Origin: Octopus bimaculoides | Lineage: Eukaryota | Direction of reading: 5' to 3' | DNA: 64,000 bases | Assembly (NCBI RefSeq): GCF_001194135.2 | Contig: NC_068988.1 | Location: forward strand, 91,580,943-91,644,942 | Notes under the pieces: generated by a model | The model's database searches: none | Told to the model about the DNA's origin: nothing | Seen by the model: the letters and a program-made list of their open reading frames with translations, nothing else | Part shown: one piece after another, positions 22,997-63,781 of the stretch | Layout of the letters: each line of letters starts with the position of its first letter | How positions within the stretch are numbered: position 1 is the stretch's first letter | Program-made: the position numbers and the translations under genes

Positions 22997-25900
22997 CTCT
23001 CTCTCACACGCACACTTAGCTTACTGCCAGTATATTCCATTCTTTATACAAACTTTGGAGAAACTGACAATACACACACACATGTATTGGGATGGTTTCT
23101 TTGTTTCTATATTGAAATCTGTTGAAAATGTCTTCAATACAGAAGTTCTAAAGTAGGAGTGGAGCACAAATGACCACACTTGACCAAAAGCTGATCTCAC
23201 ACTAAATCATATACAATTTAATTTTGGTTAAAAATGTCATTTTAAGCAGATATGTATATTGTTTTCTTGAGTAAAGACCTTGAATCCCACATCCTCTGTA
23301 CTAACTTCCCTTTTTAACACCCTACACTCGTACTCCATCAATCCATTTTTTCCATCCATTATTCCTGGGAGGGTCATGGGGGTGGTGTTCATGGGTATCT
23401 CCCCCATAGGATCCTATCAGGAGCAATTGTCATTACATTTTCCAGCTGGATTCCCAAACAACTGAGACAATGGATATTATCCAACCATCTCATTGCTGAT
23501 CAATCCCTAGATCTGCCAGTTGGCTTAGCTTCAAGAAACCAATTTGGGATTCATTCATAGTAACAGAGCTGTGACCTCACAATGCAGAGAAGCAGTGGCT
23601 TGACCTGGAGAGACTCCCTGATCTCCGAGTCCTATCAAATAACAATACTCCAGAGATCCTTTTGAGGAACCCCATTTTGGCTGCTTGTATTCACGATCAT
23701 ACTTTGTCGGTTACTGCCCAATTCATGACCATAGGTAAGGACAGGTATGAAAACAGAATTGAAGATACCATGTTTGAGCTTTTTACCAACCTCTCCACTT
23801 CCAAGGATCACATGCTGGAGCTGGTGCATTACTGTGCCAGCACCTGCAATTCTCACATCAAATTCAGCCCCTTGTTTCCTATTACTCATGAACATAGTTC
23901 CAAGATACTTAAATGTCTCAACTTGTCTCAGTGATGTTCCACTAACATGCAGAGTACACTGGGGAAACTTTCTTGACAGAACCAATGTCTCAACCTTCGC
24001 AACACTAATTCTCAACCATGCCCTGCCGCACTTGGCAGTGAGCCCGTTTAGTGCATGCTGGAGAGTACCTTTCAACAAGCCAAGCAGCACCATGTCATCT
24101 GCAAATATCAACTAACCAATCTACACCCACCAATCATGAGACAATTTCCACAATGGTAATCCACATGACAGTCCAGTTCATAAAATTTATGCTGTGTATA
24201 AACCAATAAGAATTCTCAGTTATTCATATCAATTTCTTTTCTCCCTCTCAGCAACGCACTCTACACTCCTGGGTAACCACAAACATTACCACATGACTAC
24301 ATCTATTAACTAATGTTATGATCTTACCTCCTGGTCACACACGACCAGCCTCATACTTCAGCTCAACAGTCTATTTTGAGTGAGGAGTCAGGCAATTGTA
24401 TTGTTGAATCACTCATTAATTGCAGTTATTAACAAAACATGAAATAAACATCTCCAAAGTTATCATCTGAGTAACTGAATATGGAGTTAGAATCCTGCAG
24501 GGAAACATTAATTCCATCTGTATTCAGTATTATATTTGACTGATTTCTCCACAAAAGGATTGTAAGTTTTTGAAAAGGGAAGTGCAACCTGTTTAGCTGC
24601 ACCCAGATTCACATTGGCAGTGTATATCTGCATTTATATAAAGTCTCTACACAGCAACACTCAAACAATTCAGCTCCTAACACACATATACATACCTATT
24701 ACACACAGACGCGTGCACACATGCACACACCCACATACCACTTCACCTTCCAACAGATTTTAAACCCTAATTTTCTCTTTTTATTCTGAAAATATTAATC
24801 CTTTAATTTTGAGAGAGTTAAGATCCCTAGCTAACAGCTCCATTGACAGTTAACTTTTGGATGCTGGCTGTAAGGATGAGCTACTTAAAACAGATAATCA
24901 CTAGTGAAGGGCTCATTTATGACAGATTCTGTTTTTATTCCTTAGGTAAGTTATTTTTCTCCCTTCCATAAGATAGCAGTAGAAACATTACATACTGTAA
25001 CAGTAGAGGGAGAGCAGAGTCAACAGTCTTCCTAAGCTAAACTCAATTGAAGGTCACAGGGCACCATCTGAGGTTTGGTCTTACTAATGGGGCTAAGCAT
25101 GCATGCATGATTCAGAGATGTAGAATCAAAATGAAACTTCAAGATCACCCAAACTCATTTTTTGATTCAGTAAATCAATGAAGTAGCACCATTGGTGATT
25201 TAAGGGACAAATTTTGCGATTCACTAGATATTAAAACATAGCACAATTCATCACATAAAGGGGATGCCAAGCAAGACTGAACCATCAACTGATGTTTTTT
25301 TTTTACAATAATACAGCAAAGGTAATTGATGGTTGGAGGGATGTCTTCCAGAGAGAAAGTCTGTTTCATAAACATCATCTGAAGCCCATAGACTTGTATA
25401 CAATATTTCTATATTATACAAATATGTTAAAGTTCTTAAATAGGAGAGTTTAACGGAGAAGAGAGAAACTTTCAGAAAATTCTTAGAACAGTTTCGTTGA
25501 TGAAATGTTGTTCAAGACTAGTGCAGGACCACCTTAGCAGCATTTATAGGCCTCCAGGCAAATCAGTGCACTTGACTCTTTAGTATTTATTTATCGACAG
25601 CATGCCATAACATACACAGATCAGAATTGGGCCTCAGGGCAACTGCCCAATGTGTCCATACCTTAAGAAAGCACTGCATGAATAAGCTTCAACTTCCAGG
25701 TTAAGGGTTCAAATAAAAGGTCCAACCTTGAATTGGAGTCTGACTCTAGATAAGACCTGACTCAGTAGATCTCTAATCAAAGAATATTTTAACCATGACA
25801 AGCATGTCTTGATTGCATTCCATATTAAATGTCTAATGGGTCTTTCCTTATTTAAGATCTGTACAACCACAAAGCTCCCACATTGACTTGACAGATCCAG

Positions 25901-29100: not shown

Positions 29101-31410
29101 ACGGGTAGTCATGATGGGTATATTGAGCTTCCTATATCTGTACCCCGGTGTCACTTTGATGGTATACGCTGCTCTCTCACTCAATTATAATAATTGATGA
29201 TGATGATAACAATCCTTTCTATATTAGGTGCAAGGCCTGAAATTTTGGGGGATAGGACTAGTTGATTACATCAACCCTAGCGTTTCGTTGCAACTTACTT
29301 CATCAACCCCCATAATAATTCTTCTTACTATAGGTACAGTGCCTGAGATTTTGGTGGCAGTGGGGGTAGCTGCTTATATTGATCCCAGAGTTCAGCTGGT
29401 ATTTATTTTATCAACCCCATGATGAAAGTCAAAATCAACCTCAGTTGAATTTGAACTCAGAATGTAAAACCTGAAGAAATACCGTTAAGCGTTCTGTCCA
29501 ACATGCTAATGAGTCTCCTAGCTTGCTGCCTTTGTGGGAGAGGAGTCAAATCAATTCCAGTACTTAACTGGTACTTTATTTTATTGACCCTCGAAGGATG
29601 AATAGACAAGCTGGCCTCAGTAGAATTTGGACTCAAAGCAATAAAGACAACAAGGCATTTTGTCCAATGGTCTAACAATTCTGCCAAACAGTCAATTAAA
29701 TTGGTTTCAAATTTCGACACAAGGCCAATAATTTCGGGGGAAGGGGTAAGTCAATTACATCGACCCAAGTGCTCAACTGGTACTTTATTTTATTGACCTT
29801 GAAAGGATGAAAGGCAAAATTGACCTTGGTGGAATTTGAACTCAGAACATAAAATTACAGATGAAATGCTGCTGCTGCTAAGCATTTTGCCTTACATGCT
29901 AACGATTCTGCCAGCAACTGCCTTAAACAGTCAATTAAATTGATATCAGTATATAACCATCAGAAGGATGTAAAGTATTCTCTAGCAGAATTTGACCTGA
30001 AACAACAAGATGTAACTAAATGCAAGGACACTGTTATTCCAGTGCTTAATAATTTTGGCAATACACCAATAATGATTTCCAACAGAAGCACAATGGTTCA
30101 AACTTAAGAGGGGTAGTGAATAGTGGATTATTATTAAGGAACTCCAGCACTTAGTGCTGTCTCAAAAATATTTTATTTTCTATTGATCAAACTACTAAGT
30201 TATAGTTTTGTCTTTTTTATATGAAGGGGACTCAGCACCCATAAATACACACACACCTATTTATATATATATGTATATATGTGTGTATGTATGTATGTGT
30301 GAAAGAGTTAAGACTGAGAAAAGAACCTTGTTAGAAAGTCAAAAGACACTAACCTTTGGCAAGAGATTTCACAAAACGTGTGTGGGCTTTGCTTCTATAG
30401 ATGTGCAAGCGCTTTCAGTTCTTAACATTTTGAAGCACGTGTTACTATATATAGGGGAATTTGTTTTCAGTAAAATTGTTGTTGACTATTTCCAGTCTTG
30501 TTTCGGACTCAGAAATCTTATGAAATATTCTTCTTTTGCCTTCCGGAGAAGGTCGTTCTCTTCATTTATTTTATGAAGAGGGAAAATTGTAAATTTTCCT
30601 TGTGCACAAGTGTCCAAATGATCGCTACATGGCATACATCTAAGAGCAGATGTTTTATTTGATGTCTATGCACATTTTCACGGTTGGTTAGTTTCATTTT
30701 TCTTCCCCCAATATAATGTTCGTTGCATTGTGGGCATGTGATACAATATATCAGGTTTTTGCTTTTGCAGTTCATATTTGCATTCACCTTTAATTCTTTT
30801 CCATTCTTGGATTTTTTTACTAGTCTCTGTTCTATTAAATAATATGTCCCATATCGGGGGTCTCCACATTTAGTAACTTGCATCATTTCTTCCTCTGATG
30901 CAAATCTTGCTTTGGTTAGAAGTTTTTTAAGATTTGGTGGTAGCCTTCGGCTGTTGATTATTTGTTGTTCCTTAATTATTTGTCGGAGACATGGGGACTG
31001 GTGTAGAATTGGTAGATGGTGTTTGGCTATTTGTAGAATATTGTGGTTCTTAAGATTGTTTGTAGAATCCCACCCATGCATAAGGAAAATTTACAATTTT
31101 CCCTCTTCATAAAACAAATGAAGAGAACGACCTTCTCTGGAAGGCAAAAGAAGAATATTTCATAAGATTTCTGAGTCCAAAACTAAACTGGAAATAGTCA
31201 ACAACAATTTTACTGAAAACAAGTTCCACTATATATAATAACATGTGCTTAAAAATGTTAAGAACTGAAAGCGCTTGCACATCTATAAAAGCAAAGCCCA
31301 CACACATTTTGTGAAATCTCTTGCCAAAGGTTAGTGTATTTTGACTTTCTAAAAAGGGTCTTTTCTTAATCTTAACTCTTTGAGAAAAAAAATCTCTCCA
31401 AATATATATA

Positions 31411-31470
<60 letters not shown>

Positions 31471-34400
31471 TACAAAAATATACTTTTATAAAAATATACA
31501 CACATATACATACAGCTATACTTTAGAAGAATGAGTGCTCAACACTACATGGATGAATAAATAATTTCTTTTAATAGAATTCAGTAATCCCATACCAAAG
31601 GTTTCATGCAGTTTATTTGCAGTTATTCAATCAGAGTTTAAATAACAGCCGACAACTCTACCATTTAACTGATGACAGTATTGTGTGTGTGTGTGTGTGT
31701 GCTCTCTCATACATACACACAAATATACAAGGGGGTACTGAAATTTTTCTAGCTTTGGGTGAAAGAAAATACAGGGGGATTAGTTAATTATGATTTTATT
31801 CAACATATTCCCCTCTCAGATTCACACACTTATTGCAGCAGTCCTTCAGTTTTCGTAAGCCCTGTAAAAGAACTTGGAAGTTTGGGCCCCAACCAAGCCT
31901 TTCACAATACCCTTAAAGCTAGGAGCTTTTCAGCATCACCTATGTGTAAATATATATATATACACAGACACACACACACACAAACACTTGACTTGGCTAA
32001 TCTACAGGAATGCTTTGTTATGATAGGAAATTGTGTGACTTTTATGCCTTCTTCAAGAACAAGAACAACAAAAAATCAAGTGAGATGATTCCAAGAAGGA
32101 ATAGAAACTGGCCAAACAATGAGTAAGCGCACCAAGAACTCGGTGTGGGGTATCTAAATTATTAAAAAAAAAAATTCATTTACTTTTTAAGTTACCAAAG
32201 AAAAAAGGCATAAGGAGATTAAATCTCACTCAAATATATTACTGGTACTTTAATGATATTCTGAAGTGACGAAAGACAAAATCCTACCACAGCAGGTTTA
32301 GCTTACAACAGGAAGGCATCAAACTAGATACCAGAAAAATATCTGGCTCACTTCTGCATCCGTGCTATCACCACCACCAGCATCAATAACAATAAACAAA
32401 ACAGAGGGATATACTCTTGGATTAGCCACAGCCAAGTCAGGGGTCAGCTATAGCAGGAATGAGCAGCATTGGACAATAACAAAAACAACCACATAGTGGA
32501 ATGTGTAGGGTTTCAATGAAAAACCCTTGGTGTTACTCTATTGAAACACCAAGTAAAATAAAGTTAAACAATTTAAGAACAAATTACAAAAAATAGAAAT
32601 TGAACCTACATCTATTTTGACTGAATAGGGGAGGGGCAATGTGGATGGCAGTTTTGACATGAAACTTTTTGGAATCACAGACTTAGGATGGTTTTGGTAG
32701 TTTTAGATACTCACTGAATATTCTCAGTAAGCCAAGAGTAGATTTTACAGACTGAGTAAGGAGAAGGTATTCTGGTCTCATTTTATATGCTACAACAGTA
32801 TTTTCCCTGTTATAACATGGTTGGCTGGTTGTACACATTTCGATATAAGCATGTGAATTATTGAAGTGCAAACTACTTAACTGTAACATGTAGTATCTAT
32901 TATCAGCCAAGCAGACTGAGGCACAGTTATAGCAGCATGCTATGTGTCACAACATAACAGGGGATGCAATGTTCAAACTGAAGCTGTCTTTTCTACAGTT
33001 AACACCCAACCCCCTAGGTTAACAAGATGTTTCTACTGATGTGAAAACTAAATTATTGTAGCCAAAATATTATAGATATGAGGCTGAATCAAGTGTTAAG
33101 ACATGGGAACTAATATTTCACATCCCGCATTTAGTAGGTGTGAATATATAACTTGACTAGAAGCACAACACAGACTACTGCAGGGATAAAACCCTGATCT
33201 TTGGTTTACTCAGGCAAATACCTAAAATCCCTGCCATTATACAAAAATAAATATATACATTGAAAAAATATTTTCATCTACAATCTCAATTAAAAATGAG
33301 GAAGGTGTGGGAGATAAGACAGCTTTGCAGACAGAAGTGAGACATGACAGGGATAACACATCTTCACAGAATAATGAGACAGAGCCATAACGAGTATCAT
33401 AGTGTAATGAGATGTCATAGTGCAGTGAGTCATAACAGCATGGTGAGTCATAACAGCATGAGGAGTCATAACAGCATGAGGAGTCATAACAGCATGAGGA
33501 GTCATAACAGCATGAGGAGTCATTACAGCATGAGGAGTCATAACAGCATGAGGAGTCATAACAGCATGAGGAGTCATAACAGCATGAGGAGTCATAACAG
33601 CATGAGGAGTCATAACAGCATGAGGAGTCATAACAGCATGAGGAGTCATAGCAGCATGAGGAGTCATTACAGCATGATGAGTCATTACAGCATAGTGAGT
33701 TGGGACAGTGGGGTGAGTCATAGTGAAATGCTAAGTCATTACAGCATGATGAGTCATTACAGCATGATGAGTCGTTACAGCATGGTGAGTCATTACAGCA
33801 TGGTGAGTCGTTACAGCATGGTGAGTCGTTACAGCATGGTGAGTCGTTACAGTGTGGTGAGTTCTCACAGCATGGAGAGTCATCACAGCATAGTGAATCG
33901 GTGTCACAATGTGATAGACAATATCACGATGCAACAAGATAGTGTCACAATGTGGTGTAGCATCACAGTGAGGAGTGTCACTGTTACAGTGAAGTGAGAC
34001 ATTACACAGAGAAATGATAGTGTCACTGTGAGGTGAGGTATCATTTTTACATCTTCACATATAAAAATTAACAATCAAACAACTCCAGAATGAGTAAAAA
34101 ATAGATGAAAAGGCCAGTTAACAAAAAATACACATTGTGCTTCTGGGGTGGCTGAAATACAGAAATCAACAAATACTTCTGCATTAGACCTTTTGTCTTA
34201 ACACTAAACATATAACATGTTTAAATTATTTGCAGCACTGAAAATATTAGATAGATAGATAGATAGAGAGAGAGAAAAAGAGAGAGAGAGAGAGTGTGTG
34301 TGTGTGTGTGTGTGTGTGTGATCACAGGGAGAAAATATTAAAAAATAGATACACTTTAATAAACTGGAAGACACTGGTCAAGGAAGCAGCTGACTGAAAC

Positions 34401-37400
34401 TTTAAATACATTTCCAGAATCATCTCAAAATAACTTTTAATAAACAACCTAAAATTAAAATGTAATCTATTCTATTTACACTATTCCCAAACTCTTCACA
34501 TAAAAACAAATAAAATACATTGTCATTGAGACATGATGAAAACAAGGGGTTGCATAGCTTGTGGGGTTCATGTATATATACAACATATCTTTTATCCCAA
34601 GTGTAAGTCAAGGCTATGTTAATCTTCTGCTAAGTTGATAATGTATGTTAAGGTTACAATAACCTAAGTCCGAACAGACAGATCATCTTAGATGTTATTT
34701 GTACATATATGCTTGTAAATAATCTTGAATGTACATGTGTGTAATTGTGGTTTGTAAATGTGCACACGAGTGTGTAATAGTATGTATGTATGTAGGCACA
34801 AATGTGGGTAGGAAATTATTTACCATAAAACATGTAAGCAAAAGAAATTGGGACAAAAAGGAAAATGAAGGCAAGTAAACAGATTCTCACCGTTTTCTCA
34901 GCTTCAAGTTTGGTACCATAGTCACTAGTGGATTCCCTGAGTTTTTGCTCAAAATCAGCTACACTTATCACAGATTCGGAAGTCTGACACTGACCATCAC
35001 ACTGTTTTGGCCGAGCAGCAAGCTGCCTGTATTCTAGCAGCTCAGCTTGAGTCTGTTTTAAGTTGGCCTCACACTCAGTCAGTTTGGAAGTGAGATTTTG
35101 GTTCAGCTCAGACATGGCAGCATTAAGAGTGGTGGACAGTTCACAATGTAGTGAATGTAATGCCTGCTCTTTCTCCGCATTTAACTTGGATTGCATCGAC
35201 TTATATTCCTCATCTAAGTTTGCATAATCCAATTTCAGGGATTCTAAGGAAGCGGTATGTTCTTTAATCAGCAGCTGCTTTGCTTCCTCAACAGCTTGCA
35301 TTTTCTCAGACATGAAACTGCTTTCTAGTTTCTCAATCAGCTCAGCTTTCTCTTTCTTGTTTGTCTCAGAGAAAGTGTCAGACATGTTAGATATATCTTG
35401 CATTAACTGATCCACCCTGCACTGTGCACATTCCAGATTATTTGATACCTGCGACATTTCCTCATTTTTCTGTGCAAGGAGACCTTCATACTCACTGCGT
35501 TGCTTATCAAGCCCCACCTCCATCTCCTTCTGACATTTATCACTTAACTGCTTTAAACTTTTCTCTTTCTCATCTTCCAGGAAACTTATCTTTTGACTAA
35601 GCAACTCACACTGGTTTTTATTCTGCCTCAGCTCCTCTTCAAGAGCACTGTTTTCTTGTTCCATCTCCTTAATCTGTTCATTGGCCTTACCCAATTTTTC
35701 AGTCATCATCTGGAGTGCAATTTCGTGTTCTTTCTGGAAAGCCAAGAAATTATCAGCACGCTCTTTATCTTTATTTTCATTGAACATACGGATAGCGTCC
35801 ATGAGGTTTTCCTCGACATGACTTGCATTTCTTATAAAATCAATTTGATTTTGCCGCATCAGTTCATGTAGTTCACACAGTTGTTCGCGGAACTCTGGCA
35901 GGCTGCGTTCCGTGGTGTTTTTAAGAGCCTTCAGTTTGTCTAACGTGACACCAAAGCTGGCACGACAGGCTTGCAGTTCTCGAGAGAGTTTCTCCGACAG
36001 TTCACACTTCTCCTGCAGCATCTTCTGTAGGTCTTCCTTTGGTATTCCCTTATGTAACGGAGCTTCAATAGATGACGGCATAGATTCATCAAAGTAAAAA
36101 TCAGCTGTTGTGAATTCCTGTGAAGTTTCCACTTCAGGAGAGGTGTCTGATGCCAGATGACCTTTCCAGTGATGTCTTCGACTTGAAACACTCTCACTGC
36201 TCTGTTCAACGCTCTGATTGACTGCATCGGTGTCACAGGAGAGACGGTAGCTGTCACTGGTTCCCGCTTGTGCATCACCAACCTGTTTAGCAGGAGATCC
36301 AGATTTCATCATTAAATCCTCTTTATCTATGCAAAAATCTTCATCAATGGCAACAGCTGCTGCATCAGATGAATGCGTGCCAAAATCAACAGGGGGGGTT
36401 TGGCAATAACTGTCATTACTCTGAGTATGTGGTGAGTTGACAATAGTAAATGGACAGATGTTCTGAGATGTAGCAGTAGCAGCATCAATGGCAGATACTG
36501 ACTGGCTGGCTTCTTCCTTCTGCTCTTCTTTGTTGGTCAGCTTTAAGGATAACCTATCTTCAACCAACTCCGGAGAAATGTTACGAAGATCTTGAAACAC
36601 TTGCTTACTGACATTCACACAAAGTTGATTATAAAGATTTTTCTTTGGAGGCATTCTGGAAAACAGGATTAAAAAGAGGAAGAAAAAAAATTTAGACTTT
36701 CTCAGTGAATTAACAGTAGAAGATTAATTAACAATAAGTGGATTAATAAGTAACAGGAAATCTATAGGATGACTGAACTCTCAGGGACACAGTTTCAAGT
36801 ATTAATCTGGATCCACACAAACTTGGTTTTACTACTGCTCTAACCCTTTCTTCCTCTAACACTAACCTGAACATTGTAACAATCCTTCTACCCCTACATC
36901 ATCTTGTAACTGCTTCCTACCTCTGTATCTCTCCACTAACCACTCAACATTAAAAAATTTCCCTCAAGTGTCCATGACGGCCTGTATATAACACACTAAA
37001 CAGTTATGGATTCTGATACTGACCCTTCCCCGTAAAAGATGCTTCTGACCAACAGTAAACTATAAAAGCTAGGGGAGGAAAAAAAAAATGGGCTGTCAGA
37101 ACTCAAACAATTGACCCATATTACACCCTGGCATCAAACTGCCCAGCATCACCACCACGTTACCCACACAACTACGACAGCAAGAAGATGAAACCAAGGT
37201 AACTTACATGAGTGAACTAGCTAATTCTGGAACAGCTGTTTTCAGTTTTTCAATGTCATCACTTGTAATCTCTGGGATGTTGTGATCGAAAGTACGTGGA
37301 GGGGTTGTCTGTAGGGGGAAGAAGAAACATTGATATGGTTTTGTGAGTAGGGGTGAAGAAGAACATTGACATGGCTCAGTAAATAGGGTGAAGAACATTG

Positions 37401-58610: not shown

Positions 58611-60868
58611 NNNNNNNNNNNNNNNNNNNNNNNNNNNNNNNNNNNNNNNNNNNNNNNNNNNNNNNNNNNNNNNNNNNNNNNNNNNNNNNNNNNNNNNNNN
58701 NNNNNNNNNNNNNNNNNNNNNNNNNNNNNNNNNNNNNNNNNNNNNNNNNNNNNNNNNNNNNNNNNATAAAATAAACAATGAAAAATGTCTTGGCATCATC
58801 TCTAAAAATAGCCAAACAGCTACAACTGCTGTCCACGAGAATGCACAGTGGAGGGAAATAAATATTCGTACATGTCAAAGTTCTTTATTTATGTAATTGC
58901 TAATGAACATAAATGGGAAATACCAATACTATATTTGCATACACCTGCATAAACTAAGAATATGCAAAAGAAACTAATAAATTATAGTAACTAAGGAATT
59001 TATATACAATTATAAATATTTAGGGGTGAAAAAAGTATTCGTACAGAATAAATTTATGAGTTTCCATGCCACAAAATACAATTAAAATAATTTTTTTTTA
59101 CTAGAACTTTCTCGTTTGCTCCAATAATCTTATCAGTAGTCATTTTTAAGTGTCAAAACGCAAGCTTCTTCATCCAGCACTGAGACAACATAAAGTAGTG
59201 TCGTAATAATGGCGAAAAGGAAAGAACTCACAAATTCAGTGAAAGACTTAATTATTGAACAGTGGAAAGCAGGTAAAAGTTACAGGAAAATATCAGAGAC
59301 CCTTTGTATTCCATTTTCTACCATATCTTCATTTATTCAAAGATATAAAAAATCGGGAACTGTTGAAAACAGAATAAGATCCGGTGCACCACGCAAGATT
59401 TCCCCTAGATCTTTAAGAAAAATGAAGCGAAGAATTGAAAAAAATGCAATGATTACCAAAAAGAAGTTGCAAGAAGATCTGTTAGCTTCAGGGACCAGTG
59501 TTACACTACGAACAATCAGCAATGAACTTCATAGGAATGAACTGAAGTCACGCTCTCCTAGAAAAACTCTGCTGTTGACTAAAAGGCATAGAGATGCCAG
59601 TTTAAAATTTGTTTATGAACATAAAGATAAATCTGATACATTCCGGGAAAATGTTCTATGGACAGACGAGTCGAAAATTGAATTGTTTGGATGAAATTCG
59701 CGTAGCCATGTTTGGAGGAAAGATGATACCGCCTATTCGCCGAAAAACAATTCCTACTGTAAAGTTTGGAGGTGGCAACATCATGGTGTGGGGGTGTTTC
59801 TCTGCAAATGGCACTGGCAATTTACATGTGATAGATGGTAGAATGAATGCATAGATGTACCAAAATATTTTGAACAATAATTTATGGGACTCTGTAGAAA
59901 AGCTCCAGCTTTGTGAAGGGTGGGTTTTACAACAGGATAACGACCCTAAGCACACAGCGAAGTTTACCAAAAAAATGGATTGCCAATCATAATATAAAAT
60001 TATTAGAATTGCCAAGCCAGTCATCTGACTTGAACCCCATTGAAAATTTGTGGTGTTATTTGAAAATTAAAATTCATTCAAGAGCCCCAACTTGCATTCC
60101 AGATTTGAAGAAAATTTGTCAAGAAGAATGGAAAAAAATTCCTAAAGAAACATGCAAGTCGTTGATTAAGAACTACAAGAAGAGATTGGTTGAAGTGAAA
60201 CTGAATAATGGTTATGCTATGAAGTATTAAATCAGAATTATCAGTTATTTATGTTCTGTACGAATACTTTTTTTCACTCCTAAACATTTATAATTGTATA
60301 TAAATTCATTGGTTACTATAATTTATTAGTTTCTTTTGCATATTCTTAGTTTATGTATGTTTATGCAAATATAGTTTTGGTATATCCCATTTATGTTCAT
60401 TAGAAATTAAATAAATAAAGAATTTTGACATGTATGAATATTTATCCCCCCCCCCCACTGTATATAAAGGACAAAAGACAGCCAGTCAACTACAGTTGAA
60501 ACATTCCTGTCACAACATGGGACCTTGAAGACTGCTTAAATGCAAGAAACTATATTAGTCCTTTAATATTTGATACTCAATATTTCATTTATTCAATAAG
60601 ACAACTAATACTTCATTTCATTTTACTATATATACTATATATTCTATATCTTACATTACTATTATAAGACTATAAATAAAACATAAAAAACAGACAGAGT
60701 TGGAATTACTTTGAGTAATATATTCTTCTATACACAATCATACAAACCCCTTTATATATCATCATCGTTTAACGTCCGCTTTCCATGCTAGCATGGGTTG
60801 GACGATTTGACTGAGGACTGGTGAAACCGGATGGCAACACCAGGCTCCAGTCTATATATATATATATA

Positions 60869-60924
<56 letters not shown>

Positions 60925-62081
60925 TCAAAACAGTTTGATACAGACTCCTTGGTACTCTGAGTTTCAAGCGTACGGCTAGTCTTTGGCAATTGGGGTCTGA
61001 ATGAGAGTTCGATTGAAGAGAGTCAATGTTTATAATTGGATGTTAGCTTGCAACTGATCTAGAAAGGTCACGCAGTATAGCGGATTGATGTTGGTATTTT
61101 AGCGACAACAATTAGTTGGAAAATACCACATGGTGAACAGGAAATCGACCATGTGGTGGACAAAAAATTGGTTATGTGATTGGGGGGAAGTAGGAAGGGG
61201 TGGTAGATGTGAGAGTATATATGTAGAGGTATATGCCCATATATCAGCGTGTATGCATCCGTACTTATACGAGTGTGTGTGTGTGTAAGCACACATACAC
61301 ACTCGAATAAGTACAGATACATGCAAGCAGATTATGGGCATATACATGTAAATACATATACACCCCCACATCTACTGCCCCTTCCTACTTCCCCCCAACC
61401 ACACAACCGATTTCTTGTCCAACACACAATTTCCTGTTCTCCATGCGGTTGATTTCCTGTCCACCATGGAGTTGATTTCCTGTCCACCATGGAGTTGATT
61501 TCCTGTTCACCATGGAGTTGATTTCCTGTCCACCATGGAGTTGATTTCCTGTTCCCCATGGGGTTGATTTCCTGTTCCCCATGGGGTTGATTTCCTGTTC
61601 CCCATGCAGTATTTTCCAACTAATTGTTGTTGCTGAAATACTGACATCAAACTGCTATACTGCGTGACCTTTCTCCACCAATCACAGGCTAACATCCAGT
61701 AATAAACATTGACTCTCTACAATCAAACTCTCATTCAGAACCCAATGGTCAAAGACTAACCACACGCATGAAACTCAGAGTACCAATGAGTCTGAATCAA
61801 ATGCTTTGGTCTATACATGTAACCCCCAATAAATGTGTTGAGTGCCCTTCTTTCGTTTGTCTACTCATTTGTATATGTGTATATATATATGATTGATTGC
61901 TAGCCACTAAACCATTTTTTATTTTCTCTCTCTGTTTATGTCTGTGTTCCTTTCTGTTGAAGAGCGTAGGCTCGAAACGTAAAAGAATTTCTCACTTCCC
62001 CCAAGCATTAGACCAATACATCTGTTTGTTGTTTACACACCTGTCTTTATCTTTCATTTTATTTGTTTTTTTGTAAATTCA

Positions 62082-62145
<64 letters not shown>

Positions 62146-63781
62146 ACTTGGGGATGGTCATATTGCCAGTTTAGCCAATAAAAACACACGCACTGTATAT
62201 TTGGTGTTAATTTGCTTCAGCTTTATATTACATTAATCTTAATCTTATTTCGGCCAGAGTTCTTTCGTCACACTTCTGTGACCTCATCAGTGGTCCTTTG
62301 TTTCCTTCTTTCTTATGTGTGTCTCACCTTGCTAACTATCAGCCATATATATATATATACACACACACACACGCACTCACACACACACACACACCTCTCT
62401 CTCTCACTCTTGCCTATAAATATATCAAAGTAGAAATTAGAATACATACAGTTCCAGCACAGTAGTGCCCAACACGACAGCTATTGTCCAAACTAATTCC
62501 ACCACTGACCAACATCACCTGTTTGTCTGGAGCAATTCTACATAACCTGGCAACATGAGACTTGAGGACAGAGACCCTGCAACGACAATCAATACATTGG
62601 GTAATCATTAATAATAACTCTACAAACAGCTTTAGGAATGATAAGATGTTACGCACATGAAAATATATAGATAATATATACAAAGCCCCATTACTTTGTT
62701 GTCACTTACACTTAACTAAATAATTTCTTATTTCACACATCACTGGAGGTAAAACGCAATGAGACTATAGCACTTGTAGTTTACACCATGTGTAAACAAA
62801 CACACAGATATTCTACACAAGTTTCTTTCAGTTCCTGCTGACCAAACCATTCAGAAGGTCCAAAGTGCCACACAGTGAGACTGAACCTGAAACCATGTGG
62901 TCAGGAAGCAAATTTCTTAACTACAGTAATATGCATAGGAAGGGAAATATATGTTACCGTGATATAAAGGAAATATGACATGACACAATATGATCTCACA
63001 TGAGGCTACTAAAATGTCACCTTTTGACAGTAAATTTACACAGAAGATGATATTTCTATGAACATTGCTTGTTTCTAAGTGAGTCAGAAGAAGGTTAGTA
63101 TCCATAACTTCTTGCAAGCCCCACCCAAACATTCTAGCTGTCCTTCTTTACATTCATGGCCTTGTTTAACCTTTTTGATATCAGCCAATCTCAGAGCACC
63201 CTTGGTTCTGTGATACAAACTTCCTGTTTTATATGGATCTAAATGAAAACTTTCCCTAAGAAGGTTTAATGATGATTAAGTTATAAAGTTATTTTACTAA
63301 TTCTTCATTAATTTCAAAAATGAATTGAAACAAAAGCAGTGTTTCAACAGGAATATGATAACTAAAGAGTTAGTCATATCTGTCCCTTTACATTTTAACC
63401 CTTTAGCAATTAAACTGGCTATAACTGGCTCTGGCCAGCCCCAGCCTCTCACACATACCCTACAATACCATTCTAAAAATAACAATCACATCATCGAAAT
63501 CTTCAAGCTATGTGATAATGCATGATTAATTTGAAACAATGTGAATAAATAAGCATCACATTTGACAGAGTAATCTGAATGCTAAACGGTTAATTCTTAC
63601 TTCGTTGAATGCATGTGAAAGTATGCTAGAACTGAAGTCTAGCTGGGAGGCCTGTTTGGCTTTTGACAGGTGAAGACACGATATAAGAGATGTGAGTAAT
63701 GTGTCATACTTACGTCTCAGTGGTGTAGCAAGTATCAATGGTTAGCATCTGGCCTAACTCAACAAGAAACACATACAACAT
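4547..63781 (-). CDS. RB1CC1: RB1-inducible coiled-coil protein 1 / FIP200 (Atg11-family autophagy scaffold); 24 coding exons, 4245 nt, 1414 aa
   Basis: Spliced translation starts [17 protein letters not shown] and contains [70 protein letters not shown] and FQSGDLVL...[31 protein letters not shown]. These match RB1CC1 motifs recalled from the human protein. All 23 introns are GT-AG with compatible phases. Confidence 0.97.
4833..4903 (-). CDS. RB1CC1: RB1CC1 exon 23 ([23 protein letters not shown]), Claw domain
   Basis: 71 bp, phase 1-0, ctgttag| ... |gtaagt; PWVLG...KEYC.AKK. Confidence 0.96.
4992..5119 (-). CDS. RB1CC1: RB1CC1 exon 22 ([42 protein letters not shown]), Claw domain
   Basis: 128 bp, phase 2-1, tgtgtag| ... 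|gtaagt; FQ.GDLVL and FLH motifs. Confidence 0.96.
5382..5437 (-). CDS. RB1CC1: RB1CC1 exon 21 ([18 protein letters not shown])
   Basis: 56 bp, phase 0-2, ttcttccag| ... |gtcagt; start of the Claw domain. Confidence 0.92.
5640..6230 (+). mobile_element. Degenerate RTE-clade LINE fragment (post-YADD RT region)
   Basis: Reads ...RISVA...[14 protein letters not shown]... and shares extended similarity with the RTE fragment at 23635-24111 (opposite strand); many stops and frameshifts. Confidence 0.7.
7204..7246 (-). CDS. RB1CC1: RB1CC1 exon 20 ([14 protein letters not shown])
   Basis: 43 bp, phase 2-0, atattgtag| ... |gtaagc; its phases bridge exons 19 and 21. Confidence 0.82.
8643..8674 (+). 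pseudogene. 3' 32 nt of mature tRNA-Trp including CCA (copy 1)
   Basis: GGCTGCGTGTTCGAATCACGTCGGGGTCACCA matches the variable loop, T-arm, acceptor 3' strand and CCA of eukaryotic tRNA-Trp(CCA) as recalled. No 5' half or anticodon arm. Confidence 0.85.
8708..8739 (+). pseudogene. 3' 32 nt of mature tRNA-Trp including CCA (copy 2, one C>T in the T-loop)
   Basis: Identical to 8643-8674 except GTTTGAATC; period 65 bp. Confidence 0.85.
10270..10340 (+). mobile_element. Small RTE-type LINE relic
   Basis: Frame reads [12 protein letters not shown], a typical RTE post-RT motif. Confidence 0.55.
11008..11115 (-). CDS. RB1CC1: RB1CC1 exon 19 ([35 protein letters not shown])
   Basis: 108 bp, phase 2-2, ctcttcag| ... 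|gtcagt. Confidence 0.85.
11525..11793 (+). repeat. High-copy SINE-like family A with (GAT)n tail; other copies near 6560-6710, 27130-27320, 42120-42420, 48763-48900, 49750-50020, 57230-57420, 60760-60850
   Basis: Recurring ...GGCATCCAGCTGTAGAAACTCTGCC...CCAACCCATGCTAGCATGGAAAGCGGACGTTAAACGATGATG in both orientations. Confidence 0.85.
13358..13720 (-). mobile_element. tRNA-head SINE family C
   Basis: 5' GGAGGCGCAATGGCCCAGTGGTTAGGGC tRNA-like head and (AAC)n tail; near-identical to 37842-38203. Confidence 0.85.
14247..14328 (-). CDS. RB1CC1: RB1CC1 exon 18 ([26 protein letters not shown])
   Basis: 82 bp, phase 1-2, ttttttcag| ... |gtaagg. Confidence 0.9.
14551..15006. mobile_element. Two adjacent piggyBac-type (TTAA) MITEs; the same pair recurs at ~51981-52487
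   Basis: Ends such as TTAACTCT...AGAAGGGTTAA and ...AATGCTAAAGGGT(T)AA; internal sequence shared with other copies. Confidence 0.6.
15367..15638. mobile_element. hAT-type non-autonomous element, left end truncated
   Basis: Right end ...GGTCCGCGGACCACAGTTTGAAAACCCCTG and repeated GCGGACCCC subterminal motifs. Confidence 0.6.
16262..16361 (-). CDS. RB1CC1: RB1CC1 exon 17 ([33 protein letters not shown])
   Basis: 100 bp, phase 0-1, tacacag| ... |gtaact. Confidence 0.9.
17565..17684 (-). CDS. RB1CC1: RB1CC1 exon 16 ([40 protein letters not shown])
   Basis: 120 bp, phase 0-0, cctcttag| ... |gtaggt; coiled-coil composition. Confidence 0.9.
18220..18656 (-). mobile_element. tRNA-head SINE family B (CORE-like centre, internal (TA)n); other copies near 7440-7770, 9125-9290, 19645-19972, 43170-43300, 48960-49345, 52915-53250, 55580-55720, 62810-62920
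   Basis: Head GGAGTGGCTGTGTGGTAAGTAGC...GGTTCAGTCCCACTGCGTGGCACCTTGGGCAAGTGTC, the last part resembling the CORE-SINE core; multiple copies visible. The family name is not verified. Confidence 0.8.
18670..20210 (-). repeat. Head-to-tail array of SINE family D (~200-230-bp units, (ATT)n tails), interrupted by a family B copy
   Basis: Repeated GAAAGGATGAAAGGCAAAG...GAATTTGAACTCAGAA units separated by AAT runs. Confidence 0.8.
23400..24115 (-). mobile_element. RTE-clade LINE fragment, RT C-terminal half
   Basis: ORF 23635-24111 reads IFADDMVLL...QVETFKYLG...RIAGA...[10 protein letters not shown], then degenerates. Confidence 0.88.
29210..29930 (-). repeat. Head-to-tail array of SINE family D (about 4 units)
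   Basis: Same unit as 18670-20210. Confidence 0.75.
30302..31381 (-). mobile_element. Penelope-like element fragment: GIY-YIG endonuclease core between ~305-bp inverted repeats (30302-30606 / 31077-31381)
   Basis: ORF 30566-31081 has [22 protein letters not shown]...L..R...HR. The repeat arm encodes the C-terminal [16 protein letters not shown]. The arms are reverse complements of each other. Confidence 0.88.
31726..31930. mobile_element. Mariner-like terminal fragment
   Basis: TA-CAAGGGGGTACTGAAATTTTTCTAGCTT resembles a mariner TIR; the partner end is not seen. Confidence 0.45.
33425..33895. repeat. 18-bp minisatellite (ATGAGGAGTCATAACAGC and variants), about 26 units
   Basis: Direct tandem periodicity; produces the MRSHNS / MTPHAV repeat ORFs of the track. 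Confidence 0.95.
34891..36655 (-). CDS. RB1CC1: RB1CC1 exon 15, giant exon (Ser-rich linker followed by the central coiled coil, ends ...KLEAEKT)
   Basis: 1765 bp open frame, phase 2-0, gttttccag| ... |gtgaga; lies within ORF 34816-36654 of the track. Confidence 0.93.
37208..37308 (-). CDS. RB1CC1: RB1CC1 exon 14 ([33 protein letters not shown])
   Basis: 101 bp, phase 0-2, cccctacag| ... |gtaagt; PR.FD...P.I motif. Confidence 0.94.
37842..38203 (+). mobile_element. tRNA-head SINE family C, full length, 14-bp TSD
   Basis: A-box/B-box-like head (TGGCCCAGTGG ... GTTTCGATTCC), (AAC)n tail, and ACAGTTAATGGATG at 37820-37833 and 38204-38217. Confidence 0.88.
39888..40251. mobile_element. Possible Helentron/DINE-like non-autonomous element with TTAGGG-like tract
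   Basis: TTTTCACTTT (39893-39902) is inverted at AAAGTGAAAA (40240-40249); degenerate (TTAGGG)n at ~40196-40232; CpG content is above the flanks. Confidence 0.35.
40315..40373 (-). CDS. RB1CC1: RB1CC1 exon 13 ([19 protein letters not shown])
   Basis: 59 bp, phase 1-0, ccattgcag| ... |gtaagt; LF.GL...P..F motif. Confidence 0.94.
41576..41657 (-). CDS. RB1CC1: RB1CC1 exon 12 ([27 protein letters not shown])
   Basis: 82 bp, phase 0-1, tctgttacag| ... |gtgagt. Confidence 0.92.
41927..42060. repeat. (AAT)n trinucleotide microsatellite
   Basis: Direct reading. Confidence 0.95.
43694..43880 (-). CDS. RB1CC1: RB1CC1 exon 11 ([10 protein letters not shown]...[22 protein letters not shown])
   Basis: 187 bp, phase 2-0, tttgtctag| ... 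|gtaagt. Confidence 0.95.
44255..45375 (+). repeat. Head-to-tail array of SINE family D (4 full units + 1 partial); further copies near 21880-22080, 51075-51490, 53490-53700
   Basis: Units begin near 44255, 44481, 44712 and 44913, each GAGCTGGCAGAA...CTGAGTTCAAAT...GCCTTTCATCCTTT...GGCCTTGTGCC. Confidence 0.8.
45714..45953. mobile_element. hAT (Charlie-like) MITE
   Basis: CAGCAGTCCCCAAAC ... GGTTAGGTGACCCTG degenerate termini. Confidence 0.5.
46060..46241 (-). CDS. RB1CC1: RB1CC1 exon 10 (KFSSQLETT...[16 protein letters not shown])
   Basis: 182 bp, phase 0-2, tttggacag| ... |gtaagt; AK.EL..NLHVRL motif. Confidence 0.95.
47148..47318 (-). CDS. RB1CC1: RB1CC1 exon 9 ([57 protein letters not shown])
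   Basis: 171 bp, phase 0-0, cttttccag| ... |gtaagt; MK..KGLE.RLY.LD motif. Confidence 0.96.
47622..47678 (-). CDS. RB1CC1: RB1CC1 exon 8 ([19 protein letters not shown])
   Basis: 57 bp, phase 0-0, ctccccag| ... |gtatgt. Confidence 0.92.
47935..48440. repeat. GA-rich ~18-bp minisatellite/(GA)n tract spanning an assembly gap, just inside the exon 7 donor
   Basis: GAGAGAGGGAGGGAGACA-type units; N run at 48139-48268. Confidence 0.9.
48460..48631 (-). CDS. RB1CC1: RB1CC1 exon 7 ([17 protein letters not shown]...SLLDWIYQQ)
   Basis: 172 bp, phase 2-0, ttctctcag| ... |gtaatt; IPLL and SLLDWI motifs. Confidence 0.93.
50124..50210 (-). CDS. RB1CC1: RB1CC1 exon 6 ([28 protein letters not shown])
   Basis: 87 bp, phase 2-2, tctttcag| ... 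|gtaagt. Confidence 0.9.
50783..50898 (-). CDS. RB1CC1: RB1CC1 exon 5 ([38 protein letters not shown])
   Basis: 116 bp, phase 0-2, cttacag| ... |gtatgt; conserved HD.HLQ.QGWAA..ANL. Confidence 0.96.
54745..54830 (-). CDS. RB1CC1: RB1CC1 exon 4 ([28 protein letters not shown])
   Basis: 86 bp, phase 1-0, tattccag| ... |gtatct. Confidence 0.88.
54960..55220 (+). mobile_element. RTE-clade LINE 3' end relic
   Basis: Reads ...[34 protein letters not shown]. Confidence 0.7.
56212..56293 (-). CDS. RB1CC1: RB1CC1 exon 3 ([27 protein letters not shown])
   Basis: 82 bp, phase 0-1, attgcag| ... |gtaaac; DTNPIF motif. Confidence 0.95.
58846..60460 (+). mobile_element. Full-length (1615 bp) Tc1-family DNA transposon with ~210-bp IR/DR terminal repeats
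   Basis: CAGTG...CACTG termini; TA on the right, CA on the left; arms ~58846-59052 and ~60247-60460 are inverted and each carries two TATTCG/ATACA-type direct repeats. Confidence 0.93.
59209..60230 (+). pseudogene. Tc1 transposase pseudogene (DD34E)
   Basis: N-terminal [31 protein letters not shown] and [11 protein letters not shown], with 34 residues between the second D and E. Three frameshifts and one in-frame TAG are visible. Confidence 0.93.
60923..61811. mobile_element. Foldback (near-palindromic) element flanked by TA
   Basis: The left arm 60923-~61286 is the reverse complement of the right arm ~61289-61811, apart from a tandem expansion; the centre is GTGTGT-AAG-CACACA. Confidence 0.85.
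61425..61616. repeat. 23-bp tandem repeat (GTTGATTTCCTGTCCACCATGGA), about 8 units
   Basis: GTTGATTTCC recurs at 61448, 61471, 61494, 61517, 61540, 61563 and 61586. Confidence 0.95.
61947..61987 (+). ncRNA. Variant minimal type I hammerhead-like motif (A6 replaced by U)
   Basis: UUCCUUU-CUGUUGA-A-GAGC(GUAG)GCUC-GAAA-C-GUA-AAAGAA: stem II is perfect, stem I is 5/6, stem III is palindromic ACGU. Confidence 0.5.
62252..62296 (-). ncRNA. Minimal type I hammerhead ribozyme motif, sense to RB1CC1 intron 2
   Basis: GGACCA-CUGAUGA-G-GUCACA(GAAG)UGUGAC-GAAA-GAA-CUC-UGGCC: intact core, 6-bp stem II, stem I with one bulge, 2-bp stem III. Confidence 0.7.
62450..62576 (-). CDS. RB1CC1: RB1CC1 exon 2 ([42 protein letters not shown])
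   Basis: 127 bp, phase 2-0, ttgcag| ... |gtatgt; ubiquitin-like N-terminal region. Confidence 0.95.
63395..63593. mobile_element. piggyBac-type MITE (TTAA-CCCTTTAGCA ... TGCTAAACGG-TTAA); related copies near 15190, 17270, 52260, 54468
   Basis: TTAA at both ends, short terminal inverted repeats and conserved internal sequence across copies. Confidence 0.75.
63714..63781 (-). CDS. RB1CC1: RB1CC1 coding exon 1 ([22 protein letters not shown]; exon extends to 63793 with 12 nt of 5'UTR)
   Basis: Acceptor cctttctag| at 63794, GCCACC-ATG, donor |gtaagt, ends in phase 2. Confidence 0.93.

What the first reader, a model, noticed from the sequence alone, without database searches (positions are those of the whole stretch)
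62252..62296. Hammerhead ribozyme motif in pre-mRNA sense, ~155 nt downstream of the RB1CC1 exon 2 donor
Seen: intact CUGAUGA and GAAA core, 6-bp stem II with a GAAG loop, stem I GGACCA/UGGCC, predicted cleavage after CUC between 62257 and 62256, and one extra G between A9 and stem II. Established: Penelope-like elements and animal retrozymes carry minimal type I hammerheads with very short, often palindromic stem III that act as dimers. Here stem III reads AGAACU, one change from the palindrome AGAUCU. Inference: a PLE-derived ribozyme that, if active, would cut nascent FIP200 RNA co-transcriptionally; the broken palindrome may be an inactivating or attenuating change.
Basis: partly seen in the sequence, partly recalled or inferred. 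Interest (0 to 1): 0.7.

Follow-up and report, generated by a model that had tools for sequence, protein, structure and literature searches.

The report
Penelope-type minimal hammerhead in a repeat
The hammerhead-like motif in the RB1CC1 intron is real, but it belongs to one of about 1,800 near-identical copies of a small Penelope-derived mobile element, and as a lone copy it is unlikely to cut the gene's RNA.

Summary
It is not unique to this gene. The 45-mer occurs 863 times exactly and 1,809 times within 3 mismatches in the 2.34-Gb genome.

It sits in a 5'-truncated ~210-nt copy (62136-62345) of a ~400-nt non-coding element. Copies lie in (TA)n microsatellites, vary in 5' truncation, have an optional 3' tail and often form head-to-head inverted pairs. 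The element's last ~100 nt are 74-82% identical to the 3' UTR of a GIY-YIG Penelope-like element (PLE) family in the same genome.

The "extra G", long helix II and short helix I are published hallmarks of PLE minimal hammerheads, not defects. The non-palindromic AGAACU is the family consensus, not a change at this locus. Rfam models do not detect the motif.

Tandem copies are almost absent, so this is not a retrozyme array. Published single minimal hammerheads show no detectable self-cleavage, so cutting of FIP200 pre-mRNA is unlikely and remains untested.

Verdict: a new member of a known kind, of modest interest.

The parts
62252..62296 (-). Minimal type-I hammerhead motif. Helix I 5' arm 62296-62291; CUGAUGA 62290-62284; unpaired G 62283; helix II 62282-62267 (loop GAAG 62276-62273); GAAA 62266-62263; loop 3 'GAAC' 62262-62259; U16.1 62258; C17 62257; helix I 3' arm 62256-62252.
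   Evidence: Read directly. The descriptor scan finds only this site in the window. The MFE fold shows helices I and II. No Rfam hit.
62136..62345 (-). 5'-truncated copy, with the short 3'-end form, of a ~400-nt non-coding PLE-derived interspersed element. It corresponds to positions 127-337 of the full-length form.
   Evidence: 99.5% identity over 211 nt to the full-length form built from other loci. The 186 nt at 62150-62335 are 100% identical at >=40 genomic places. Boundaries come from 30 aligned loci.
62085..62137 (.). (TA)n microsatellite abutting the element's 3' end; the probable insertion target.
   Evidence: The same (TA)n flank appears at the 3' end of most of the 30 copies. (TA)n targeting is described for PLEs (PMC8557442).
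62346..62395 (.). (TA)n followed by (CA)n microsatellite abutting the truncated 5' end.
61889..62085 (+). Older, related PLE-derived SINE-like repeat. It lies tail-to-tail with the element above across the same (TA)n. It carries a degenerate minimal-hammerhead layout at 61950-61987: CUGUUGA-A-GAGC-GUAG-GCUC-GAAA-CG-UA, with U at core position 6.
   Evidence: 84-90% identical to >=40 genomic copies, 2,153 candidates. Consensus derived from 20 copies. 92% identical to that consensus.
62450..62576 (-). RB1CC1/FIP200 coding exon 2 (ubiquitin-like N-terminal domain). Donor GT at 62449/62448.
   Evidence: Match to human RB1CC1 residues 28-86, E = 2.4e-7. Exon 1 at 63781-63713 and next exon starting at 56293.

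Best explanation
The motif is an inherited Penelope-type minimal hammerhead. It is carried on the sense strand of a short, non-coding, PLE-mobilised retroelement that derives from a PLE 3' UTR.

One 5'-truncated copy of this element inserted, in gene-sense orientation, into a (TA)n microsatellite 90-300 nt inside the intron after RB1CC1 coding exon 2. The likely mechanism is target-primed reverse transcription by a GIY-YIG/RT Penelope-like element.

At this locus it is a passenger. As a single copy with a 1-2-bp helix III and a non-palindromic loop, it should not cleave efficiently in cis. RB1CC1 pre-mRNA is therefore most likely spliced normally, with the element removed along with the intron.

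Shown here: the motif, the repeat family, its insertion signatures, and its 3'-end homology to a PLE. Inferred: mobilisation by that PLE lineage, and lack of catalysis at this locus.
For: **A repeat family, not a gene-specific feature.** There are 863 exact and 1,809 <=3-mismatch copies of the 45-mer, on both strands equally, with 0 for the reversed control. The surrounding 186 nt are 100% identical at >=40 loci.

**Retroelement and PLE signatures among 30 copies.**
- A constant 3' region with variable 5' truncation.
- Both ends embedded in (TA)n.
- Two alternative 3' ends that differ by a 65-nt 'tail'.
- A 32-nt inverted copy of that tail at the 5' end of long copies.
- Head-to-head inverted pairs: 5 pairs among the first 100 hits (L043-L046).

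These are the features described for PLEs (PMC8557442). The tail is explained by two RT start sites (PMC11167929).

**Homology to an autonomous PLE.** The last ~70-100 nt are 74-82% identical, in the same orientation as the ORF, to the 3' UTR of a GIY-YIG PLE family (L049 E = 4e-14, L078 E = 1e-14). That family has >=152 copies and open frames up to 900 aa. It carries a hairpin-plus-GAAA about 160 nt from its 3' end, the same distance as in this element.

**Motif architecture.** The unpaired nucleotide after A9, G10.1-C11.1, 6-bp helix II and 5-bp helix I match the published PLE min-HHR consensus.

**Likely inert at this locus.** There is only one sense copy in the window. Published single min-HHRs gave no detectable cleavage. 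Hammerhead catalytic mutants did not affect PLE insertion in vitro.
Against: - No Rfam hammerhead model scores the motif, so membership rests on a descriptor and on literature features rather than a statistical model.
- No autonomous PLE carrying this exact motif was found. The related PLE family (L049/L078) and the older sister repeat have non-canonical cores. The intact core here could therefore be retention without function, or even partly fortuitous.
- Within-family variation looks neutral: mostly C>T changes, and one compensatory double among 49 helix II variants. It gives no evidence of selection on the fold.
- Catalytic inactivity at this locus is inferred, not measured. About 1,800 copies could supply partners for trans-dimers.
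Confidence: 0.75

Rival explanations
1. The motif is an active ribozyme at this locus. It self-cleaves nascent RB1CC1 pre-mRNA 190 nt into the intron, co-transcriptionally, and so lowers FIP200 output.
For: All invariant core nucleotides, A15.1-U16.1 and a cleavable CUC triplet are intact and lie in the pre-mRNA sense. The MFE fold forms helices I and II. Many transcribed copies could act as dimer partners.
Against: - There is a single copy in the intron sense strand.
- Helix III is 1-2 bp with an AA loop, so a dimer would have two A.A mismatches.
- Single PLE min-HHRs gave no detectable cleavage, and dimers only weak, mostly non-physiological cleavage (PMC4209133).
- No RNA-seq ends were seen at a PLE hammerhead site in Anolis (PMC11167929).
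- The family reached about 1,800 copies with this loop, so there is no sign that the loop matters.
Confidence: 0.08
2. The conserved unit is not a ribozyme. It is a hammerhead-derived structural element: helix II stacked on the G8-A9/G12-A13 'domain 2'. It serves PLE RNA recognition or processing, for example RT/EN binding in the 3' UTR, and catalysis is dispensable.
For: Three related families keep UGA-(1-3 nt)-hairpin-GAAA at the same distance from the 3' end. Their stems are completely different: GUCACA/UGUGAC, GAGC/GCUC and GUUGC/GCAAC. Two of the three have lost G5 and/or A6 of the U-turn. Hammerhead mutants do not impair PLE insertion in vitro. Naiad PLEs keep only 'HHR_core' remnants (PMC8557442).
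Against: There are only three families, aligned by eye; MAFFT did not reproduce the structural alignment. No protein-binding data exist. A decaying ribozyme would leave the same pattern.
Confidence: 0.12
3. The hammerhead resemblance is a chance feature of an abundant repeat and has no evolutionary link to ribozymes.
For: The relaxed descriptor is expected to hit hundreds of times by chance in 2.3 Gb. There is no Rfam support. The fold z-score is only -1.3.
Against: - The motif shows four independent PLE-specific traits: the extra nucleotide, G10.1-C11.1, a long helix II and a short helix I.
- It lies on the sense strand of an element with PLE 3'-end homology.
- It sits at the position where related families carry the same layout.
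Confidence: 0.05

Closest known systems
Minimal hammerheads (min-HHR) of metazoan Penelope-like elements (Cervera & de la Pena 2014, PMC4209133)
   Same: Type-I topology. An unpaired nucleotide between A9 and G10.1, a G10.1-C11.1 pair, a long helix II (6 bp), a short helix I (5 bp) with no defined loop 1, and a vestigial helix III. Copies are mostly single and truncated, plus inverted pairs 50-700 bp apart. Rare copies are associated with full PLEs.
   Different: Loop 3 is AA, so AGAACU is not palindromic. The palindromic AGAUCU and AGUACU occur in only 4 copies each. No full PLE carrying this exact motif was recovered. The family is carried by a ~400-nt non-coding derivative rather than a pLTR flanking an ORF.
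Animal non-LTR retrozymes (Cervera & de la Pena 2020, PMC7229834; Li et al. 2026 bioRxiv 10.64898/2026.07.22.740005)
   Same: Small (200-400 nt), AT-rich, non-coding, hammerhead-bearing and thought to be mobilised by PLEs.
   Different: Retrozymes are tandem arrays with canonical type-I hammerheads (loop 1-loop 2 contacts) that yield circRNAs. Here copies are dispersed singles: one direct tandem at ~205-nt spacing in the genome. The hammerhead is of the minimal PLE type, and Rfam Hammerhead_1 does not score it.
Canonical PLE hammerheads in the same genome (RF00163 hits L001-L011; L067)
   Same: The same core. L067 (GAGGC CUGAUGA AUGCC AAUA GGCAU GAAA GUACGUAC UC GCCUU) shares the GAAAG...CUC context and lies ~200 nt downstream of a GIY-YIG domain.
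   Different: Those have a 2-3-bp helix III with palindromic sequence (ACAUGU, AGUACGUACU) and, for L001-L011, pass the Rfam gathering score. Ours does not.
Sm-alpha SINE-like hammerhead elements of Schistosoma
   Same: A short, non-autonomous, high-copy retroelement carrying a type-I hammerhead. This comparison is from my own knowledge; the elements are cited within PMC4209133.
   Different: Sm-alpha has a canonical hammerhead with tertiary contacts and a tRNA-like promoter region. No tRNA-like head was seen here.

Membership tests
Hammerhead ribozyme (general) | Invariant core C3 U4 G5 A6 N7 G8 A9 ... G12 A13 A14 | tested here: met
   CUGAUGA at 62290-62284 and GAA at 62266-62264.
Hammerhead ribozyme (general) | A15.1-U16.1 pair and a non-G nucleotide at position 17 | tested here: met
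   A 62263, U 62258, C17 62257; the triplet is CUC.
Hammerhead ribozyme (general) | Three helices enclosing the core in one molecule | tested here: inconclusive
   Helix I has 5 bp with a bulged A and helix II has 6 bp. Helix III has only 1 bp with a 4-nt loop, or 2 bp with a sterically impossible 2-nt loop. A stable helix III would need a second molecule.
Hammerhead ribozyme (general) | Match to a curated covariance model (Rfam RF00163/RF00008/RF02275-7) | tested here: not met
   No hammerhead family at gathering score, nor at E<=10 on 601 nt or 71 nt. The same genome has 11 RF00163 hits over the cut-off elsewhere.
Hammerhead ribozyme (general) | Site-specific self-cleavage giving 2',3'-cyclic phosphate and 5'-OH ends | not testable with these tools
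   Requires in vitro transcription or RNA-end mapping.
PLE minimal hammerhead (min-HHR) | [quoted passage not shown] | tested here: met
   G at 62283. The feature is listed in PMC4209133.
PLE minimal hammerhead (min-HHR) | Conserved G10.1-C11.1, long helix II and short helix I without a defined loop 1 | tested here: met
   G62282-C62267 closes a 6-bp helix II. Helix I has 5 bp and is open-ended.
PLE minimal hammerhead (min-HHR) | Palindromic 15.2-16.2 and loop 3, allowing a dimeric helix III | tested here: not met
   15.2/16.2 are G/C and so complementary, but loop 3 is AA. AGAACU paired with itself gives two A.A mismatches. Palindromic variants occur in only 8 of about 1,800 copies.
PLE minimal hammerhead (min-HHR) | Lies on the sense strand of PLE terminal (pLTR / 3' UTR) sequence | tested here: met
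   The element's 3' ~100 nt align plus/plus with the 3' UTR downstream of the GIY-YIG ORF in L049/L078 (74-82% identity, E about 1e-14). An exact autonomous parent was not found.
Non-autonomous PLE-mobilised element | PLE insertion signatures: microsatellite target, 5' truncation, inverted 5'-truncated partner, optional 3' tail, no ORF | tested here: met
   compared with PMC8557442 and PMC11167929.
Animal non-LTR retrozyme | Head-to-tail tandem repeats, each unit with a hammerhead | tested here: not met
   One direct pair at 188-218-nt spacing in the whole genome. One direct pair against five inverted pairs among the first 100 hits.
Animal non-LTR retrozyme | Canonical type-I hammerhead with loop 1-loop 2 tertiary contacts | tested here: not met
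   There is no loop 1 and Rfam Hammerhead_1 is silent.
Animal non-LTR retrozyme | Expressed as monomeric circular RNA | not testable with these tools

The most novel reading that the evidence does not exclude
The roughly 1,800 sense-intact copies of this minimal hammerhead, many presumably inside introns, might pair with one another in trans or with nearby copies. Intronic copies such as the one in RB1CC1 would then be cut in vivo. That would make a genome-wide, PLE-borne layer of ribozyme cleavage of pre-mRNAs in this cephalopod.
Probability: 0.05. Interest if true: 0.75.

Novelty: new member of a known kind. Interest (0 to 1): 0.3.

Why it matters
For RB1CC1 it matters little. The motif is a passenger of a common repeat and tells us nothing special about FIP200 regulation.

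For cephalopod genomics there are two modest points.

1. A young family links a class of small elements to Penelope-like elements through their 3' ends and a minimal hammerhead. About half of its sampled motifs are still identical (863 of 1,809). Current octopus repeat annotations would probably file such elements under "unclassified SINE" (PMC13282606 lists 893 such families). The family's youth also implies recent PLE activity.

2. Three related families keep the hairpin-plus-GAAA half of the hammerhead, and two of them have lost the catalytic U-turn. This is a natural experiment bearing on an open question: what are PLE hammerheads for?

Tried and rejected
- **Rfam scans at three stringencies.** No hammerhead hit. 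I did not treat this as refutation, because PLE min-HHRs are documented to escape standard descriptors.
- **RNAcofold of wild type against AGAUCU/AGUACU versions.** Predicted dimers were dominated by non-hammerhead pairings, so the result is uninformative.
- **Within-family covariation.** Forced-mismatch pattern searches on loop 3 and on the helix II 5' arm gave 12 and 49 variant copies. The spectrum is neutral-looking, with C>T giving G.U pairs and one compensatory double. As expected for dead-on-arrival copies, this is neither for nor against function.
- **MAFFT alignment of hammerhead regions across families.** It did not recover the structural register, so no pair-count statistics were attempted. 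The cross-family comparison is by eye.
- **MITE/DNA-transposon reading**, prompted by the 32-nt terminal inverted sequence and TA flanks. I rejected it because of the variable 5' truncation, the alternative 3' ends and the 3'-UTR homology to a GIY-YIG/RT element.
- **tRNA-derived SINE reading.** No A/B-box-like head was seen.
- **Search for the exact autonomous parent.** 30 GIY-YIG loci were screened and only L049 matched.
- **PDB search with the 42-aa exon alone.** It gave only weak FUBI hits. Adding the next exon was needed to identify RB1CC1.
- **Pfam RVT_1 on the L049 RT fragment.** No detection. A YVDD motif is visible in the ORF.

Full report
**1. Observation.**

On the minus strand, 62296-62252 reads GGACCA-CUGAUGA-G-GUCACA-GAAG-UGUGAC-GAAA-GAAC-U-C-UGGCC.
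- Every invariant hammerhead core position is present.
- Helix II has six Watson-Crick pairs closed by G-C.
- Helix I has five pairs with one bulged A.
- The minimum-free-energy fold of the 71-nt context shows helices I and II, but it is not unusually stable (z = -1.3).

A descriptor scan written to accept this architecture finds only this site in the window. In 300 Markov simulations of the window, it expects 0.02 hits per 64 kb, and 0.003 at the observed stem lengths. That is improbable for one window but not for a 2.3-Gb genome, so chance has to be judged from context.

**2. Gene context.**

The exon 62576-62450 (minus strand), joined to the next exon starting at 56293, matches human RB1CC1 residues 28-86 (E = 2.4e-7). 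A further exon at about 47.2 kb matches residues 346-388. A first coding exon ([17 protein letters not shown]..., 63781-63713) lies upstream.

The motif therefore lies in pre-mRNA sense, 153 nt past the donor (GT 62449/8) of coding exon 2, inside a 6.2-kb intron.

**3. The motif belongs to a repeat.**

- The 186 nt around the motif are 100% identical at 40 or more loci on many scaffolds.
- The 45-mer occurs 863 times exactly and 1,809 times within three mismatches. Counts are equal on both strands, and the reversed control pattern gives none.
- Aligning 30 copies defines an element whose sense strand is the window's minus strand.

The full-length form is about 400 nt and has no ORF. Most copies are truncated at variable 5' points.

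Two 3' ends occur: ...ACAACAA|(TA)n, or a version 65 nt longer ending ...CTTGCAAAACAAA|(TA)n. Long copies begin with a 32-nt inverted copy of that 3' tail. Both ends are embedded in (TA)n or (CA)n microsatellites.

About 10% of the first 100 hits form head-to-head inverted pairs 50-180 nt apart. The window copy (62136-62345) corresponds to positions 127-337 at 99.5% identity.

**4. Link to Penelope-like elements (PLEs).**

- The genome holds many GIY-YIG ORFs: 112 or more scored hits.
- Of 30 such loci, one (L049) has a 3' UTR whose end is 82% identical over 71 nt to the element's 3' end, in the ORF's orientation.
- That PLE family has 152 or more scored copies, some with open frames up to 900 aa.
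- The 3' UTR of one such copy (L078) aligns over about 100 nt at 74% identity.

The insertion signatures match published descriptions of PLEs: (TA)n targets, adjacent inverted 5'-truncated copies and an optional tail (PMC8557442). The tail is explained by two internal RT start sites (PMC11167929).

I conclude that the element is a non-autonomous derivative of a PLE 3' UTR, mobilised by that lineage. The exact parent was not found.

**5. Which kind of hammerhead.**

Cervera & de la Pena (PMC4209133) defined PLE 'min-HHRs' by these traits:
- a conserved G10.1-C11.1 pair;
- a long helix II and a short helix I with no defined loop 1;
- a vestigial helix III whose 15.2-16.2 positions and loop 3 are palindromic, so that two copies form an active dimer.

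They also reported that these motifs occur mostly as single truncated copies, with some inverted pairs 100-700 bp apart.

The present motif meets every trait but one: AGAACU is not palindromic.

AGAACU is also the consensus of the whole family. A forced-mismatch search found only 12 copies changed at the two loop As: GAUC in 4, GUAC in 4, and other changes in 4. No palindromic subfamily exists within one mismatch.

Canonical PLE hammerheads do exist in the same genome. There are 11 RF00163 hits. L067 carries GAAA-GUACGUAC-UC about 200 nt downstream of a GIY-YIG domain. This suggests the ancestral loop may have been AGUACU-like.

**6. Relatives of the motif.**

Immediately left of the (TA)n, on the plus strand (61889-62085), lies an older sister family: 84-90% identity among copies and 2,153 candidates. 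It has a related 5' box (ATGRYTGATNGNTAGC) and a related 3' end (CCCNAG...ACATCTGTTT...ACACAC).

Its consensus carries CUGU[C/U]GA-A-GAGC-GUAG-GCUC-GAAA-CG-UA. That is the min-HHR layout, with the extra nucleotide, G10.1-C11.1 and a palindromic ACGU, but with U at the essential position 6.

The L049/L078 PLE 3' UTR carries CUAUUGA-(UA/AAA)G-GUUGY-AAGAC-GCAAC-GAAA-AU-UU about 160 nt from its end. This is the same distance as in the element, and both G5 and A6 are changed.

So three related families keep UGA-hairpin-GAAA with entirely different stems, and only the present family keeps the full core. This comparison was made by eye; MAFFT did not reproduce it.

It argues that the motif descends from a PLE hammerhead rather than arising by chance. 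It also argues that catalysis is dispensable for amplification in this lineage. That agrees with two published findings: hammerhead mutants do not impair PLE insertion in vitro, and hammerhead-less Naiads proliferate.

**7. Within-family variation.**

Of 49 copies changed in the helix II 5' arm, 22 are single C>T changes, which leave G.U pairs. One is a compensatory double (C>A with G>U). The rest break pairs. This looks like neutral decay of dead copies and is uninformative about function.

**8. Not a retrozyme.**

Animal retrozymes are tandem arrays with canonical type-I hammerheads that yield circRNAs (PMC7229834; bioRxiv 10.64898/2026.07.22.740005). Here a whole-genome pattern search found one direct pair at 188-218-nt spacing. 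The motif also lacks loop 1-loop 2 architecture.

**9. What happens at RB1CC1.**

The intron sense strand in this window carries one copy only. The sister element's motif is antisense and core-mutated.

Published single min-HHRs showed no detectable self-cleavage, and dimers showed only weak cleavage, mostly at non-physiological Mg2+. Here a dimer helix III would contain two A.A mismatches.

The most likely outcome is that the element is transcribed as part of the intron and removed by splicing, without consequence. I put about 8% on meaningful cleavage at this site.

**10. Verdict.**

This is a new member of a known kind. Interest is modest. It lies mainly in the family's youth and its link between small 'unclassified' octopus repeats (PMC13282606) and PLEs, and in the pattern of core loss with hairpin retention across related families.

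Noticed in passing
window 61889-62085 (+), motif 61950-61987: An older sister repeat family (84-90% identity among copies, >=2,153 candidates) lies tail-to-tail with the finding's element across the same (TA)n. Its consensus has a complete minimal-hammerhead layout but U instead of A at core position 6.
   Followed up: yes
L078 (G000:C2:54689200-54690900) ~860-890; L049 2440-2480: A GIY-YIG PLE family with open frames up to 900 aa carries a hairpin-plus-GAAA (CUAUUGAUAG-GUUGY-AAGAC-GCAAC-GAAAAUUUU) about 160 nt from its 3' end, where a hammerhead would be expected. Core positions 5 and 6 are changed, so this looks like a hammerhead remnant in an apparently intact PLE.
   Followed up: partly
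genome-wide: C>T at helix II position 10.3 (GGTTACAG) recurs in 14 copies of the family and keeps the pair as G.U. It could be a small subfamily or a mutational hotspot.
   Followed up: no
window 59194-60230 (+): Tc1/mariner-type transposase ORFs (Pfam HTH_SB E = 7e-15, HTH_Tnp_Tc3_2 E = 2e-13) lie inside the same RB1CC1 intron.
   Followed up: partly
window 30566-31090 (-): An ORF containing [18 protein letters not shown] looks like a remnant of a PLE GIY-YIG endonuclease domain. Pfam gave no hit at E<=0.01.
   Followed up: partly
window 23635-24111 (-): A reverse-transcriptase fragment ([11 protein letters not shown]...; weak RVT_1 hit, E = 0.0055), probably a LINE remnant in an RB1CC1 intron.
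   Followed up: partly
window ~61380-61545: A minisatellite with a ~24-nt unit (CTGTYCMCCATGGRGTTGATTTC), just upstream of the older repeat.
   Followed up: no
window 33237-34054: A long coding-looking tandem repeat, open in several frames (CCNDSS / HAVMTP repeats), of unknown nature.
   Followed up: no
window 4547-63781 (-): RB1CC1 appears to span almost the whole window on the minus strand. It runs from the first coding exon (63781-63713) to a last-exon-like [18 protein letters not shown] at about 4.6 kb (weak ATG11 hit), and includes a 635-aa coiled-coil exon at 34816-36723.
   Followed up: partly
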